64,000 nucleotides of DNA. Origin: Ostrea edulis. Its lineage: Eukaryota. How positions within the stretch are numbered: position 1 is the first letter of the stretch; each line of letters begins with the position of its first letter. The DNA is taken from positions 124,001 to 188,000 of the forward strand of contig NC_079167.1 in NCBI RefSeq assembly GCF_947568905.1. The letters are read 5' to 3'. Positions 18,279 to 27,903 of the stretch are shown here, piece by piece. The notes under the pieces were generated by a model. The model did not search any database, was not told the origin of the DNA, and worked only from the letters and a program-made list of their open reading frames with translations. The position numbers and the translations under genes are program-made.

Positions 18279-18863
18279 ATGGCTTCAAAACATCTGGTAC
18301 CCGAACAGCAAAACTTTGTTCGACTATCTTTTGCCTGTTTGGATGAAATTCGAGTAATGCTGGGAGACATTCTACACTGCCAGATACCACCAGAAGATCT
18401 CTTCAAGAAAATCCAAGCTACCACGACATTGTTAATCGGAAACCAAAAGCTCAGTCCAGAACAATTAAAACTTTGTTATAATCCTTGTCCTTTTGTCCCA
18501 GATTATCAATGTTTTGATATCAGCTTACTGTACAAGCTCATCCGGAACCTGTGTCAAACATTACAACCTTCACAAGGATGGGGACAAAAACCCCGCAAGA
18601 CAGACATCAAAATCGGAGATGATATTGAACGTCTCAGATTATTTAGAAATGAGATGGTTGGACATGCGGGGTCTTCCTATGTACCTGATGGTATATTTGC
18701 TTCCAAGTGGAGTGAGCTTGAAAATATTTTTAAGAGGATACAGGGATTTTTATCATTAAACGGAATCACAAAAAATTTCCTGGAACAACTTGTATGTCTC
18801 AAAAGAACCAACTTTGGTTGGCAGGATCACGAAAAGAGCGAAATGCGCTTGATGTTCGTTTGA
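18279..18863 (+). CDS. DZIP3-type HEPN domain, copy A; 194-aa ORF terminated by the insertion
   Basis: FDISLLYKLIRN, GWG, IGDDIERLRLFRNEMVGH (intact R-x5-H); reads ...RLMF-V-stop because the insert supplies GTT TGA. Confidence 0.8.
   Translation: MASKHLVPEQQNFVRLSFACLDEIRVMLGDILHCQIPPEDLFKKIQATTTLLIGNQKLSPEQLKLCYNPCPFVPDYQCFDISLLYKLIRNLCQTLQPSQGWGQKPRKTDIKIGDDIERLRLFRNEMVGHAGSSYVPDGIFASKWSELENIFKRIQGFLSLNGITKNFLEQLVCLKRTNFGWQDHEKSEMRLMFV
18801..18858 (+). repeat. Left copy of the 58-bp target-site duplication
   Basis: aaaagaaccaactttggttggcaggatcacgaaaagagcgaaatgcgcttgatgttcg; repeated at 27846-27903 with one mismatch (18821 G, 27866 A). Confidence 0.93.
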
Positions 18864-19575
18864 TATTCGTAGGATTGGTTAACTATATATCGTTAACCGA
18901 ATGGTGACTGTATTATCTGCCATAATACTATCCATCTCATTGCGATCCAGCCTCACCCTCCAACACCTCCCAAATGCACCAACGTAGTGAAGTTGAAGTG
19001 TGTTGTAGTAACATACATATGCTCCGTATGGGACGTATGGGTTGTCCCATGGTTTAAAAATAAATAAATAAGGACCATCGTGTACCAACACGTCTAATGA
19101 CTGTGGTACTGTCTTTTGATGGCCGGACACATACATGTGGTCATATGTCATAAATTATAATCAAATAAAGAAGTAACTTATAAATGATTAATAAAATTGA
19201 TCAAGAAAATTTAATATAATGATTTTTATTTGATTTGATTTATTTAATAGATATAATTATAATAGATCTAATTATAATAATAATTTATGTTTAATATATT
19301 ATATTTTATAAATAACAGAATATTTAATATTTATTTGGATTTGGATTTTAATAGAAGGTAATAATTAGTAATATTAGTAACAGGTAATAGTAATAGGGAT
19401 GTACATGTAGGTATGTATATACATGTGAAATAACTAAAATATATACAGAAAAGAATTAGGGTAGGGTCGCCAAAGAAAATTTTGATAATAGAGTGCTACT
19501 AGTTATTAGTTATTAATTATAAATTTTGCCATACAACAATTTTGAGATCGTCATTAGGCAAGAATTTTGAGGTCG

Positions 19576-19645
19576 TCATCAGGTGCTACACCTCATACCC
19601 TGTACCATGTTTCTGTAGCTAGATCCAGCTTATAGCACGACATGG
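19576..19645 (-). ncRNA. Hammerhead-like motif, mirror copy
   Basis: Reverse complement of 27045-27114. Confidence 0.4.
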
Positions 19646-20003
19646 CTCCCTAACTCTTATTCGATAGTATGTATTATGTATGTAAACTAAAGATGTATAT
19701 CGTAATAAAATAATAAAGTAATAAAGTAAAAAGGTTAGTGAGTTAGTTCATATAACAAATTAGTATGACATAGATTAAATTATGACTATATTAATGGCTA
19801 TAATAATTGATTTTAAAAAATTTTATACCCGTGATATTATAGCATAATATTTTACATATAAACACATAAACATACATTTACATATGCACAGATATATACA
19901 TATAATATAATAATAATTGTAATCCATATCCATATTCATATAGAGAGAAAAAAGAGGGAAAGAAAGAAAGAGAGAAAAAAAATTTGTTAAAAATTTATTT
20001 ATA

Positions 20004-20075
20004 TGCGTAAGCAGGACTCGAACTCTCGACGGTATACCTTGTGATTATGAGCTCTAACCACTCGGCCACGGAGAC
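20004..20075 (-). tRNA. tRNA-derived pseudogene / Pol III module, mirror copy
   Basis: Reverse complement of 26615-26686. Confidence 0.65.
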
Positions 20076-21741
20076 CATACGCTACCGAAGGCCAAAAATT
20101 TATTATAATGCTGTAAGATTAAGTTTAATATAATAATTATTGATGTTTGTAAAATTAGATGTTGTACGGTTTTGTAAGTATATACGTTAAGAAACTTTTA
20201 GTTATGGTAGTAAATATTTGTTAACGTTTCAGTGCTAAAGATTGCGTATAAAATATAATGTTAAACTGTAATTGACGGATTTAGTATAAACATTTGAACG
20301 ATGAAAGCATATACACTGTACGATAAGAACCTTTTTGTTTATGGTAGTAAATATTTGTTAATGTTACAGTGCTAAAAAGATAGTGTATAAATTTATAATG
20401 TTAAACTGTAATTGACGGATATATAACATTTGAACGATGAAAGGACCCTTTAGTTATGGTGGTAAACATTAGCTGAATTAATAGTGCTAAAATGATATTT
20501 GGTGAACGTATATTTTAGTTATAACTAATAGAATTTATGCTATAACTAATAAAAGAATTTTTTAAACAATTAAGTTATTGCCGACAAAGATGCATAGGTA
20601 ATGAATTGACTGTAAAGATCGCTAAAAGTGCTTAAATTAATTAATGTTGTAGACAATAATAACGTAATTATAACATATTTAAATGGGTTTTACTTACCAA
20701 ACGGAAGGAACTTAGTGAAAACCCAACTGAACTAAAGGATTCGAAATGGAAATGACGAGATTAATTACGTATGTTAATGTTATGACGTGATTGATTGCGT
20801 ATGTTACTATTATGACGTGCATTTGAGTTAGTGATTTTTCCGCGAAAACTGTGATATGGTATACCGTTATATAAATAACAATGTAGAAGCATTTGAAGTT
20901 TATGAATTTATTGAATCAGTACAAATAATATAATAATAATATCAATCAGTATAAATAATGAATTAATATATGTAAAATCAATATTAAAAAAAACAAAAAT
21001 TTAATTTAAAATTAGTATGGGGAATAATAATTGATAATAGATAATGGAGTGAGGAATAATAATTGATAATGGAATTAAAAGAAAAACCATGGGTTTTTAT
21101 ATTGACATGAATATGAATATGTTGATTTGAGATGAAAATAAGAAATTGTGATTATATATGTGATTATATATATGATTAATTTGAATAATTTTAGTGATTT
21201 AATGGAGATTGAGGAAATTGTAATATCTTTATCATACTATATATAATGTGTACACATAAAATTCAATACATATTATTATGACTAAAAGTTATACTATATT
21301 GTCATAACTTAAAAAAATAATTACAATGCGATGTATAAATATTGCTATAACAATAATTAGTACATTTGTGTAATTATATGTATTATATGAATTGTTATAA
21401 CACAAGTAGTGTGTTTATAGTCCATCCACACTAACAAAGTCTATATAAATGTGTTATAACACAAGTAGTGTGTTTATAGTCCATACACACTAATAAAGTC
21501 TATATATATACAAATTGTACTAACATATGTAGCGTGCTTATATTCTGTATACAATTACAGTATATATATTATTTTTAATAACATACATATAGTGTTAATA
21601 TTTCGTATCCATTGACAAAGTCCGTATATGTATATATTTAAATATGTAGCTATAGTTTATGAAATACTGTAGTCTATGAATATGTTTAGTTGAAAAAACC
21701 AATACCATGTATAACACAATAAACCTCAGACAGACACATAT

Positions 21742-22164
21742 TTACCAATGAGAAAAATTTATATCGTGCATGAAATAAAATCTGAAAATATCGTAACACA
21801 CTGAAAGTTTAAGATTGTGGTACATTTTGTGTGCAAACCAAGAGATAGATTTAGTGAATGGTGTATTTATAATAATGCCTTGCTCATTGACAGTGTCATA
21901 TATTAGTAATAAAAATGTATGGAAGTATTTGCATTCTCTAACTTTTTTGCTTTGTTTGCCTATGTAGTAAATAGTGTTTTTATGTGTACCTAGGTACTTA
22001 AAGGATATAACAACTTGAGAATCACAGAAATCCATACATGGAATTTGTAGTGAAATGTTATTTTTGTTAAAGTTGAAAGGAATATTATTAACATCACAAT
22101 ATATGGTGTCAACATAGTCAAAGTTAGTAAATTCTTGAAACACCATGGACAGGAAATGGCTCAT
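21742..22164 (-). CDS. Unknown 140-aa ORF2 of the element, mirror copy
   Basis: Identical translation to 24526-24948. Confidence 0.45.
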   Translation of the reverse strand: MSHFLSMVFQEFTNFDYVDTIYCDVNNIPFNFNKNNISLQIPCMDFCDSQVVISFKYLGTHKNTIYYIGKQSKKVRECKYFHTFLLLIYDTVNEQGIIINTPFTKSISWFAHKMYHNLKLSVCYDIFRFYFMHDINFSHW

Positions 22165-26505: not shown

Positions 26506-26614
26506 TATATACTTACAAAACCGTACAACATCTAATTTTACAAACATCAATAATTATTATATTAAACTTAATCTTACAGCATTATAATAAATTTTTGGCC
26601 TTCGGTAGCGTATG

Positions 26615-26686
26615 GTCTCCGTGGCCGAGTGGTTAGAGCTCATAATCACAAGGTATACCGTCGAGAGTTCGAGTCCTGCTTACGCA
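26615..26686 (+). tRNA. tRNA-derived pseudogene / SINE-like head with intact Pol III A and B boxes
   Basis: A box TGGCCGAGTGG (26622-26632) and B box GTTCGAGTCC (26667-26676) at tRNA spacing (45 nt); acceptor and T stems pair poorly, so not a functional tRNA. Confidence 0.65.
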
Positions 26687-27044
26687 TATAAATAAATTTT
26701 TAACAAATTTTTTTTCTCTCTTTCTTTCTTTCCCTCTTTTTTCTCTCTATATGAATATGGATATGGATTACAATTATTATTATATTATATGTATATATCT
26801 GTGCATATGTAAATGTATGTTTATGTGTTTATATGTAAAATATTATGCTATAATATCACGGGTATAAAAATTTTTAAAATCAATTATTATAGCCATTAAT
26901 ATAGTCATAATTTAATCTATGTCATACTAATTTGTTATATGAACTAACTCACTAACCTTTTTACTTTATTACTTTATTATTTTATTACGATATACATCTT
27001 TAGTTTACATACATAATACATACTATCGAATAAGAGTTAGGGAG

Positions 27045-27114
27045 CCATGTCGTGCTATAAGCTGGATCTAGCTACAGAAACATGGTACAGGGTATGAGGT
27101 GTAGCACCTGATGA
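27045..27114 (+). ncRNA. Candidate hammerhead-like ribozyme with permuted segment order
   Basis: CCATGT-C-GTGCTA ... GAA-ACATGG ... TAGCAC-CTGATGA: stem III (6 bp), GUC site, stem I (6 bp) and both core strands present; stem II not resolved. Confidence 0.4.
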
Positions 27115-27845
27115 CGACCTCAAAATTCTTGCCTAATGACGATCTCAAAATTGTTGTATGGCAAAATTTATAATTAATAACTAATAACTAGTAGCACTCT
27201 ATTATCAAAATTTTCTTTGGCGACCCTACCCTAATTCTTTTCTGTATATATTTTAGTTATTTCACATGTATATACATACCTACATGTACATCCCTATTAC
27301 TATTACCTGTTACTAATATTACTAATTATTACCTTCTATTAAAATCCAAATCCAAATAAATATTAAATATTCTGTTATTTATAAAATATAATATATTAAA
27401 CATAAATTATTATTATAATTAGATCTATTATAATTATATCTATTAAATAAATCAAATCAAATAAAAATCATTATATTAAATTTTCTTGATCAATTTTATT
27501 AATCATTTATAAGTTACTTCTTTATTTGATTATAATTTATGACATATGACCACATGTATGTGTCCGGCCATCAAAAGACAGTACCACAGTCATTAGACGT
27601 GTTGGTACACGATGGTCCTTATTTATTTATATTTATTTATTTTTAAACCATGGGACAACCCATACGTCCCATACGGAGCATATGTATGTTACTACAACAC
27701 ACTTCAACTTCACTACGTTGGTGCATTTGGGAGGTGTTGGAGGGTGAGGCTGGATCGCAATGAGATGGATAGTATTATGGCAGATAATACAGTCACCATT
27801 CGGTTAACGATATATAGTTAACCAATCCTACGAATATCAAACAAA

Positions 27846-27903
27846 AAAAGAACCAACTTTGGTTGACAGGATCACGAAAAGAGCGAAATGCGCTTGATGT
27901 TCG
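27846..27903 (+). repeat. Right copy of the 58-bp target-site duplication
   Basis: See 18801-18858; preceded by c plus an A-run extended by 3 nt. Confidence 0.93.

What the first reader, a model, noticed from the sequence alone, without database searches (positions are those of the whole stretch)
18801..27903. Unusually long 58-bp TSD with primer-template microhomology at both ends and no poly(A) tail
Both arms end at the same element nucleotide (...cctacgaatatcaaa[c]), which implies a precisely defined RNA 3' end. On the left, the last host bases TTGATGTTCG nearly repeat the first insert bases TTGATATTCG, so the host 3' end could pair with the RNA terminus CGAAUAUCAA via one G-U and then realign. 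On the right, the junction runs through caaaa with a 3-nt A slip. This resembles annealing-assisted, telomerase-like priming at both ends of a widely staggered break (inference).
Basis: partly seen in the sequence, partly recalled or inferred. Interest (0 to 1): 0.72.

Follow-up and report, generated by a model that had tools for sequence, protein, structure and literature searches.

The report
Penelope-like retroelement pair with 58-bp duplication
The 58-bp repeat is a real target-site duplication left when an oyster Penelope-like retrotransposon entered a gene exon as two head-to-head copies, apparently primed from both cut DNA strands; such long duplications and short primer/RNA-tail matches are normal for this family.

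Summary
Window 18801-18858 and 27846-27903 are a 57/58 direct repeat. Two uninterrupted paralogs carry that stretch once, so it is a true target-site duplication (TSD).

The 8,987-bp insert is two 5'-truncated copies of one Penelope-like element (PLE), head-to-head with their 3' ends outward. A 124-nt filler copied from a satellite joins them. The arms are identical except for one 10-nt indel. The ORF has a PLE reverse transcriptase but no detectable endonuclease.

- **3' end:** in 63 junctions the family ends ...ATCAAA-CAAA-CAAA, ragged only in the last unit. There is no poly(A).
- **Left arm:** it has no tail. The host hexamer in its place matches the tail at 5/6 positions, which is simpler than "pair internally, then realign".
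- **TSD length:** across the family TSDs run 12-206 bp, and another dimer has 59 bp. 58 bp is typical here, not an outlier.
- **Microhomology:** host/tail overlap totals 34 nt over 16 junctions, against 7 expected (p<5e-6).

The best model is target-primed reverse transcription from both 3'-OH ends of a staggered break. A purified PLE protein cleaves and extends both strands in vitro (PMC11167929). This is a new variant of a known kind. The empty allele and the palindrome centre were not confirmed by reads.

The parts
18279..18858 (+). Host coding exon upstream of the insertion (HEPN_DZIP3 domain). The reading frame resumes at 27904.
   Evidence: ORF list. Pfam PF18738, E=1.9e-22. Paralog alignment shows one continuous exon.
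18801..18858 (.). Left copy of the 58-bp target-site duplication (ancestral G at 18821).
18853..18858 (+). Host hexamer TGTTCG at the 3' end of the top-strand primer. It matches the reverse-complemented canonical tail TGTTTG at 5/6 and stands where the left copy's tail would be.
   Evidence: This is the only one of 63 junctions where host sequence, known from the other TSD copy and the paralogs, starts directly after ATCAAA.
18859..22988 (-). Left PLE copy, 4,130 nt, 5'-truncated, antisense on the + strand. Its 3' end (ATCAAA) lies at 18859 and it has no CAAA tail.
   Evidence: Inverted repeats I1/I2. BLAST to the full-length relative L058. Truncated RT ORF 22346-22960 on the minus strand.
22989..23113 (+). 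Central filler. 124 nt are 100% identical to a segment of a 2.37-kb tandem satellite that also carries this element's 3' module. It is not part of the full-length PLE unit.
   Evidence: Satellite continuations appear as loose ends at 22993 and 23113.
23114..27845 (+). Right PLE copy, 4,732 nt, 5'-truncated about 2.2 kb into the 6,886-nt unit. It ends ATCAAA+CAAA (27842-27845).
23115..24344 (+). RT-coding part of the PLE ORF in the right copy. It stops where canonical PLEs continue into a GIY-YIG endonuclease.
   Evidence: The full 759-aa ORF of relative L044 aligns to RVT_1+GIY-YIG PLE ORFs of the same genome at E=2e-20 and 3e-17. Nearest atlas clusters are HTH_animal/RVT_1. No endonuclease was found.
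27846..27903 (.). Right copy of the 58-bp TSD (derived A at 27866).
27904..28265 (+). Continuation of the interrupted host exon (immunoglobulin-like domain).
32489..32546 (+). Single, uninterrupted copy of the 58-bp stretch in a tandem paralog, used as an empty-site proxy.

Best explanation
A Penelope-like retroelement of an oyster genome integrated into a coding exon of a HEPN_DZIP3/Ig gene. The element is AT-rich, about 6.9 kb, forms pseudo-LTR partial tandems, and has an RT ORF without a recognisable endonuclease. Its 3' end is ...ATCAAA(CAAA)2, with no poly(A).

Proposed sequence of events:
1. The target was opened by two nicks 58 nt apart on opposite strands, leaving two overlapping 3'-OH ends.
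2. Each 3' end primed reverse transcription at the 3' tail of an element RNA (double-ended target-primed reverse transcription). The bottom-strand primer produced the right copy of 4,732 nt. The top-strand primer produced the left copy of 4,130 nt.
3. Short, imperfect pairing between the primer ends and the CAAA-repeat tail set the start points. Host bases stand in for the missing tail at 5/6 positions on the left and 3/4 on the right.
4. The two 5'-truncated cDNAs were joined head-to-head through a 124-nt template switch onto a satellite RNA that shares the element's 3' module.
5. Fill-in of the 58-nt overhangs gave the TSD.

What is shown: the TSD, the anatomy, the PLE identity, the family-wide 3' end, the long variable TSDs, the recurrent TSD-flanked head-to-head dimers, and the microhomology statistics. 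What is inferred: the order of events, the use of two RNA molecules, the template switch, and who makes the nicks (an endonuclease supplied in trans by EN+ PLEs, or pre-existing breaks).
For: - **TSD.** 57/58 identical and single-copy in two paralogs.
- **Arms.** Identical over 4,130 nt apart from one 10-nt indel, while other family copies differ by 4-10%. That points to one event and one template species.
- **PLE identity.** BLASTP 2e-20 and 3e-17 to RVT_1+GIY-YIG ORFs, covering the N-terminal region and the RT. A 973-nt pseudo-LTR at 99.9% identity in L058.
- **Other dimers.** Five other head-to-head dimers have their outward 3' ends flanked by direct TSDs of 59, 33, 12, 24 and ~137 bp. Single copies have TSDs of 18-21, 34-38, 36-40 and 206 bp.
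- **3' end.** Precise in 61/63 junctions and ragged only in the last CAAA unit.
- **Microhomology.** 34 nt over 16 junctions against a null mean of 7.2, p<5e-6.
- **Literature.** An inverted 5'-truncated copy placed head-to-head is a PLE hallmark (PMC8557442, PMC3846280). A purified PLE protein, predicted to be dimeric, cleaves and extends both target strands, unlike R2 and L1 (PMC11167929). EN- PLEs must secure 3'-OH groups in other ways, and Athena/Coprina do so by terminal-repeat pairing (PMC8557442).
Against: - In this locus the exact, perfect overlap is small: 0 nt on the right and 1 nt on the left. The case rests on imperfect matches (3/4, 5/6) plus family statistics.
- A-rich target preference of a nuclease could mimic annealing.
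- No endonuclease domain was found in the family ORF, so the origin of the two nicks is unknown.
- Read evidence is thin. One contig of the best-holding run, possibly the assembly's own sample, crosses the left junction by only 24 nt. The palindrome centre and the empty allele were not seen.
- One TSD mismatch against none in 4.1 kb of arm is unexplained.
Confidence: 0.78

Rival explanations
1. Assembly artefact. The 9-kb perfect palindrome would be a mis-join of long reads, such as a chimeric or fold-back read. The real locus would hold a single copy or none.
For: The arms are perfectly identical over 4.1 kb. No read or contig shown bridges the centre junctions. Only 24 nt of one contig cross the left junction, and that run may be the assembly's own sample. 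PLE tandem/inverted structures are known to trouble assemblies (PMC8557442).
Against: An artefact would not place two outward 3' ends exactly against a 58-bp direct duplication of a unique exon sequence. It would not insert a 124-nt satellite filler, and it would not leave the arms of unequal length (4,130 against 4,732 nt). Five other loci show the same TSD-flanked head-to-head architecture with diverged arms, so they are old and real.
Confidence: 0.06
2. A single ordinary insertion was later turned into an inverted duplication at the DNA level, by replication template switching or hairpin/fold-back repair. A variant is reverse transcriptase snapping back on its own cDNA.
For: Arm identity is equally expected if one arm was copied from the other. 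Self-priming has been proposed for PLE palindromic junctions (PMC3846280).
Against: Copying back along the first cDNA into the target would duplicate the flank in inverted orientation, whereas the flanks here are direct repeats. The centre is not a palindromic junction. It is a 124-nt foreign filler plus 588 nt present in only one copy. The left arm lacks the CAAA unit that the right arm has, and it starts where host bases mimic the tail. So it was primed independently at the host 3' end.
Confidence: 0.08
3. L1-style twin priming. The second-strand 3' end anneals internally on the same RNA and produces an inverted 5' segment.
For: The geometry is similar: two primers, an inversion and a TSD.
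Against: Twin priming gives two non-overlapping parts of the element. Here both arms contain the same 4.1 kb, including the 3' end. Two complete runs starting from an RNA 3' end are needed.
Confidence: 0.02
4. A DNA transposon or foldback element with giant terminal inverted repeats, or two independent nested insertions.
For: Long inverted arms containing internal tandem repeats look like a foldback element.
Against: The arms encode a PLE reverse transcriptase, and their outer ends are retroelement 3' ends. Most of the 446 genomic 3' ends belong to single 5'-truncated copies or tandem arrays. TSD length varies from 12 to 206 bp, unlike the fixed TSD of a transposase. Nested independent insertions would not share one TSD around the pair, nor have identical arms.
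Confidence: 0.01

Closest known systems
Penelope-like elements (PLEs), especially the biochemically studied Poseidon PAc of Anolis (PMC11167929) and the structural descriptions in PMC8557442 and PMC3846280
   Same: Reverse transcriptase with the PLE N-terminal conserved region. Pseudo-LTR partial tandems, heavy 5' truncation and no poly(A). An inverted 5'-truncated copy placed head-to-head. TSDs of variable length. Both target strands can be cleaved and extended in vitro.
   Different: No GIY-YIG domain was detected at either end of the ORF, and Rfam finds no hammerhead. TSDs are far longer than the 8-10 bp reported for Adineta vaga Penelope. [quoted passage not shown] The 30-40-bp 'tail' extension is not seen here.
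Endonuclease-deficient PLEs (Athena, Coprina; also PLE-X and MjPLE01, mentioned in PMC8557442)
   Same: The ORF lacks an endonuclease. A short terminal repeat on the RNA can pair with a DNA 3' end to start cDNA synthesis.
   Different: Athena and Coprina pair reverse-complement telomeric repeats with telomeric overhangs and sit at chromosome ends. This family's repeat is CAAA. Its copies are interstitial on all chromosomes, lie inside genes and minisatellites, and are flanked by TSDs.
Naiad/Chlamys PLEs (N-terminal endonuclease, CxC linker, no canonical hammerhead; abundant in molluscs)
   Same: Mollusc host, no canonical hammerhead, complex tandem/inverted insertions and a bias toward tandem repeats. 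The full-length ORF has a Cys-rich N-terminus that includes a CWC tripeptide.
   Different: No GIY-YIG is recognisable upstream of that motif (hhalign probability 1%). Clade membership was not tested by phylogeny.
LINE-1 twin priming and long-TSD LINEs (for example Dualen, PMC9977147)
   Same: Target-primed reverse transcription in which the second-strand 3' end is also used as a primer. TSD length is set by the distance between the nicks, and long TSDs are known.
   Different: Twin priming inverts a non-overlapping 5' part. Here two complete 3'-anchored copies are made. The reverse transcriptase is a PLE type, not a LINE type.

Membership tests
Penelope-like elements (PLE) | Reverse transcriptase of the PLE type, including the conserved N-terminal region upstream of the RT | tested here: met
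   The 759-aa ORF of relative L044 aligns over 560-630 residues to ORFs of the same genome that carry RVT_1+GIY-YIG, at E=2e-20 and 3e-17. Nearest atlas clusters are HTH_animal/RVT_1 from rotifers and cnidarians. Pfam itself gives no hit.
Penelope-like elements (PLE) | Pseudo-LTR: a full-length copy adjoined in direct tandem by a 5'-truncated copy (here upstream of it) | tested here: met
   In L058 a 973-nt direct repeat (99.9% identical) frames a 6,886-nt unit.
Penelope-like elements (PLE) | Inverted 5'-truncated copy adjacent head-to-head | tested here: met
   Seen in the window and in at least five further TSD-flanked loci: L066, L067, L068, L059 and L105.
Penelope-like elements (PLE) | GIY-YIG endonuclease fused to the RT (canonical EN+ PLEs) | tested here: not met
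   No Pfam hit at E<=10 on the full ORF. hhalign against GIY-YIG domains of local PLEs gives probability 1% for the N-terminus and 0.15% for the downstream 140-aa ORF. This fits the EN- subset of PLEs.
Penelope-like elements (PLE) | Hammerhead ribozyme in the pseudo-LTR or 3' region | tested here: not met
   Rfam cmscan of 18000-29000 at E<=1 returns no hammerhead family. Naiads also lack canonical hammerheads, so this does not exclude PLE membership.
EN- telomeric PLEs (Athena/Coprina) | Reverse-complement telomeric repeats at the 3' end, and location at chromosome termini | tested here: not met
   The tail is (CAAA)2. The 446 copies are spread along all large contigs, within genes and minisatellites, and have TSDs.
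LINE-1-type twin priming | The inverted segment and the direct segment are different, adjoining parts of one RNA | tested here: not met
   Both arms hold the same 4,130 nt, including the 3' end.
Foldback / TIR DNA transposons | Transposase-defined termini with a TSD of fixed length | tested here: not met
   TSDs range from 12 to 206 bp. The arms are retroelement copies carrying an RT ORF.

The most novel reading that the evidence does not exclude
An endonuclease-less PLE family spreads inside chromosomes by letting the CAAA-repeat tail of its RNA anneal to whatever DNA 3'-OH ends are available at widely staggered breaks (12-206 nt apart). A dimeric RT complex primes on both ends at once. Head-to-head dimers with long TSDs would then be the natural footprint of this symmetric, annealing-driven integration. 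The family would be an interstitial counterpart of telomere-capping Athena/Coprina elements and a living intermediate between telomerase-like end addition and endonuclease-driven retrotransposition.
Probability: 0.25. Interest if true: 0.65.

Novelty: new variant of a known kind. Interest (0 to 1): 0.45.

Why it matters
How PLEs integrate is still called undefined in the literature, in particular why they form tandem and inverted copies. This family gives unusually clean natural footprints. Its young, TSD-flanked head-to-head dimers have two outer ends that are both RNA 3' ends with measurable primer/tail overlap. That is what the in vitro finding of cleavage and extension on both strands predicts.

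The family also appears to lack its own endonuclease, yet it is interstitial and makes long TSDs. That bears on how EN- retroelements find 3'-OH groups.

For genome annotation, the insertion disrupts one member of a tandem HEPN_DZIP3/Ig gene family. It also shows that 9-kb perfect palindromes in oyster assemblies can be genuine PLE insertions.

Tried and rejected
**Searches that found nothing**
- Pfam on the RT ORF, on the full 759-aa ORF and on the 140-aa downstream ORF gave no hits.
- A PDB sequence search returned only noise.
- Rfam at E<=1 over the insert found no hammerhead or other credible family.
- hhalign of local GIY-YIG domains against the ORF N-terminus and the 140-aa ORF was not significant.

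**Data-access limits**
TSDs were therefore measured only for copies whose 5' junction lay within about 1-1.5 kb, which biases the set toward short copies.
- Many copies sit in minisatellites, where TSD length is ambiguous (L007, L008, L010, L017, L022, L025, L069, L079, L085, L104). These were left out of the TSD list and the statistics.
- It gave no empty-allele read and no bridge over the centre. Most joints and loose ends came from other copies and from the satellite.
- PMC522041 (Penelope EN/RT biochemistry) is not held.

**Models rejected:** snap-back copying, because it predicts an inverted target duplication; twin priming; a foldback transposon; two nested insertions.

'anneal to CGAAUAUCAA then realign' was set aside as the main mechanism. 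The 10-mer resemblance is kept as a weak, recurring target feature.

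
Full report
**1. What is in the sequence**

Window 18801-18858 and 27846-27903 are a 58-nt direct repeat with one difference, G at 18821 against A at 27866.

The 8,987 nt between them form a near-perfect palindrome. Arms 18859-22988 and 23702-27841 are exact reverse complements, apart from one 10-nt indel in an ATTT-type repeat at 19055-19070 / 27630-27635. 713 nt lie between the arms.

The insert is 22-32% G+C (mostly about 25%), against about 37% in the flanks. It interrupts an open reading frame. 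ORF 18279-18858 has a HEPN_DZIP3 domain (PF18738, E=1.9e-22), and the frame continues at 27904 into an immunoglobulin-like domain.

**2. The repeat is a true target-site duplication**

The same genome holds two uninterrupted paralogs of this exon. One is in the window itself (32369-32603, 95% identical) and one is on another chromosome (L062, 94%).

Both carry the 58-bp stretch once, running straight from the upstream exon sequence into ...GATGTTCG AA(T/C)GTATTAAGC. Both have G at the variable position, so the A in the right copy is derived.

The actual empty allele was not seen. It showed one 1,351-nt contig of the best-holding run lying on 18300-18882 without a mismatch, which is 24 nt into the insert. 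It showed nothing bridging the centre. The other joints and loose ends come from other genomic copies and from a satellite. The runs identify the organism as an oyster.

**3. What the insert is**

The + strand ORF 23052-24344 has reverse-transcriptase motifs. The left arm holds a truncated mirror image on the minus strand. Pfam does not recognise it.

A 96%-identical relative (L044/L058) has a 759-aa ORF. That ORF aligns over 560-630 residues with ORFs of the same genome that carry RVT_1 plus a C-terminal GIY-YIG domain, at E=2e-20 and 3e-17. These are canonical Penelope-like elements. The language-model atlas places it next to HTH_animal/RVT_1 clusters from rotifers and cnidarians.

In L058 the element is a 6,886-nt unit framed by a 973-nt direct repeat (99.9% identical), which is the pseudo-LTR partial tandem typical of PLEs.

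The window's insert is therefore two 5'-truncated copies of one PLE:
- a left copy on the minus strand, 22988 to 18859, 4,130 nt;
- a right copy on the plus strand, 23114 to 27845, 4,732 nt.

They lie head-to-head with both 3' ends outward.

The 124-125 nt between them (22989-23113) do not belong to the PLE unit. They are 100% identical to part of a 2.37-kb tandem satellite, which itself carries the last ~860 nt of this element.

The family ORF stops just where canonical PLEs continue into GIY-YIG. No endonuclease was detectable in the ORF, in its N-terminus or in the conserved 140-aa downstream ORF. No hammerhead reached E<=1 in Rfam.

**4. The 3' end and the two junctions**

The terminal 23-mer occurs 446 times in the genome and never in the reversed-pattern control.

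In 63 junctions the sequence after ...CCTACGAATATCAAA is CAAA in 61 and CAAAC in 52. It then decays across the next three bases:

| Tail present | Junctions |
|---|---|
| full CAAACAAA | 20, plus one junction reading on as CAAACAAAC |
| lacking 1 nt | 9 |
| lacking 2 nt | 9 |
| lacking 3 nt | 9 |
| lacking 4 nt | 9 |

No poly(A) is present. The canonical end is therefore ATCAAA-CAAA-CAAA.

The window's right arm reads ATCAAA-CAAA followed by host AAAAGAACC. The host's AAAA stands where the second unit would be, matching it at 3/4.

The left arm, read in element orientation, is ATCAAA followed at once by host CGAACATCAAG. Here host sequence, independently known from the other TSD copy and the paralogs, directly replaces the whole tail. 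It matches CAAACA at 5 of 6 positions. For random sequence I estimate the chance of that at roughly 0.005-0.01 (my calculation, not a tool result).

The arms therefore do not end at the same canonical nucleotide. What they share is that host bases mimic the part of the tail that is missing.

**5.

TSDs could be read cleanly at these loci:

| Type | Locus | TSD |
|---|---|---|
| Head-to-head dimer | L066 | 59 bp (58/59 identical) |
| Head-to-head dimer | L067 | 33 bp |
| Head-to-head dimer | L068 | 12 bp |
| Head-to-head dimer | L059 | 24 bp (22/24) |
| Head-to-head dimer | L105 | ~137 bp (~96%) |
| Single copy | L018/L021 | 18-21 bp |
| Single copy | L080 | 34-38 bp |
| Single copy | L084 | 36-40 bp |
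| Single copy | L016 | 206 bp (96.6%) |

Ten further copies lie in minisatellites, where the length is ambiguous. 58 bp is near the middle of the family's range, not an outlier.

Where the host sequence is known from the other TSD copy, the bases that could be either host or canonical tail total 34 nt over 16 junctions. Twelve of the 16 junctions have at least 1 nt and the longest overlap is 5 nt. A composition-based null gives a mean of 7.2, and none of 200,000 simulations reached 34.

Host flanks match CGAATATCAA at 8/10 or better in 4 of 63 junctions, against 2 of 252 control windows.

The 3' ends are homogeneous, and the flanks are complementary to the RNA end.

**6. Mechanism**

The direct orientation of the TSD around two outward-facing 3' ends requires two things. 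The top-strand 3'-OH at 18858 and the bottom-strand 3'-OH opposite 27846 each had to start a cDNA at an RNA 3' end. The two nicks had to lie 58 nt apart. This is double-ended target-primed reverse transcription.

The alternatives fit worse:
- **Snap-back copying** of the first cDNA would duplicate the flank in inverted orientation.
- **Twin priming** would give non-overlapping segments.
- **Nested independent insertions** would not share one TSD or have identical arms.
- **An assembly artefact** would not produce this junction anatomy, nor recur at five older loci whose arms have diverged to 92-99% identity.

The 124-nt filler is best read as a template switch onto a satellite transcript that shares the element's 3' module, and so probably its RT binding. 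That reading is an inference.

The published record agrees on the main points:
- Inverted 5'-truncated head-to-head copies are a PLE hallmark whose origin is called undefined (PMC8557442, PMC3846280).
- A purified Poseidon protein, predicted to dimerise, cleaves and extends both target strands, unlike R2 and L1 (PMC11167929).
- EN- PLEs must obtain 3'-OH groups by other means, and Athena/Coprina do so through terminal-repeat pairing (PMC8557442).

[quoted passage not shown] The microhomology seen here is therefore a family-specific difference, or it reflects an A-rich target preference.

**7. What remains open**
- Who makes the nicks: an endonuclease supplied in trans by the many EN+ PLEs of this genome, or pre-existing breaks.
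- Whether one or two RNA molecules are used.
- Why one TSD base differs when 4.1 kb of arm do not.
- Read-level confirmation of the palindrome centre and of the empty allele.

**8. Verdict**

The feature is a young, textbook-quality example of PLE double-ended integration, in a family with unusual traits: no recognisable endonuclease, a (CAAA)2 tail with junctional microhomology, and TSDs of 12-206 bp. It is a new variant of a known kind, of moderate interest.

Other first-stage notes on this same stretch (the palindrome and the atypical PLE) agree with this reading. Another PLE head-to-head stub was noted elsewhere in this genome.

Noticed in passing
window 22989-23113; arrays such as G000:C3:16840296-16887949 (21 units), C7:39457205-39473868, C2:84151028-84168306, C1:42271058-42280300: A tandem satellite with a period of about 2.2-2.4 kb. 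Each unit carries the last ~860 nt of this PLE, including its exact 3' end, together with the 124-nt segment used as filler in the window. It looks like a tandemly amplified non-autonomous derivative of the PLE.
   Followed up: partly
L007, L008, L010, L017, L022, L025, L069, L079, L085, L104: About ten of the 63 distinct junctions examined sit inside minisatellites with periods of 30-50 nt. This suggests an insertion bias toward tandem repeats, as reported for microsatellites in other PLEs. Their TSD lengths are ambiguous.
   Followed up: partly
window 18821 vs 27866: The only TSD mismatch is a derived G>A in the right copy, while the 4,130-nt arms have no substitution. L066 likewise has 1 mismatch in 59 bp of TSD and none in its 59-nt arms. 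This could be error-prone fill-in of the overhangs or chance.
   Followed up: no
window 24526-24948 (+), mirrored at 21742-22164 (-); L058 4969-5391 (-): A 140-aa ORF in the 3' region is intact in both the window copy and the copy in L058, whose DNA is about 91% identical. It has no Pfam hit and no GIY-YIG similarity, and its function is unknown.
   Followed up: partly
L044:1501-3777:- (residues ~60-100 of the 759-aa ORF): The N-terminus is Cys-rich and includes a CWC tripeptide. It also shows a very weak resemblance to the GIY-YIG core of local PLEs (hhalign E=0.048, probability 1%). It may be an eroded N-terminal endonuclease with a CxC linker, as in Naiad/Chlamys PLEs.
   Followed up: partly
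window 32369-32793 and 18279-28265: The interrupted HEPN_DZIP3/Ig gene has a 95%-identical tandem paralog about 4.6 kb downstream in the same window, and further paralogs on C8, C7 and C9. It is a multigene family, so the disrupted copy may be dispensable.
   Followed up: partly
window 18300-18842 in run X24: A 2026 Illumina run of the same species label gave zero reads at 95% likeness or better on the host exon. By my estimate about five reads would be expected at roughly 1.5x sampling. Possible causes are presence/absence or high divergence of this gene copy between individuals.
   Followed up: no
window 19055-19070 vs 27630-27635: The only difference between the two arms is a 10-nt indel in an ATTTATTTAT-type repeat. 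It is compatible with polymerase slippage during one of the two reverse transcriptions.
   Followed up: no
G000:C4:124001-188000: The window lies only ~124-188 kb from the start of a chromosome-scale contig. A subtelomeric position was not examined. Other family copies are spread along all chromosomes.
   Followed up: no
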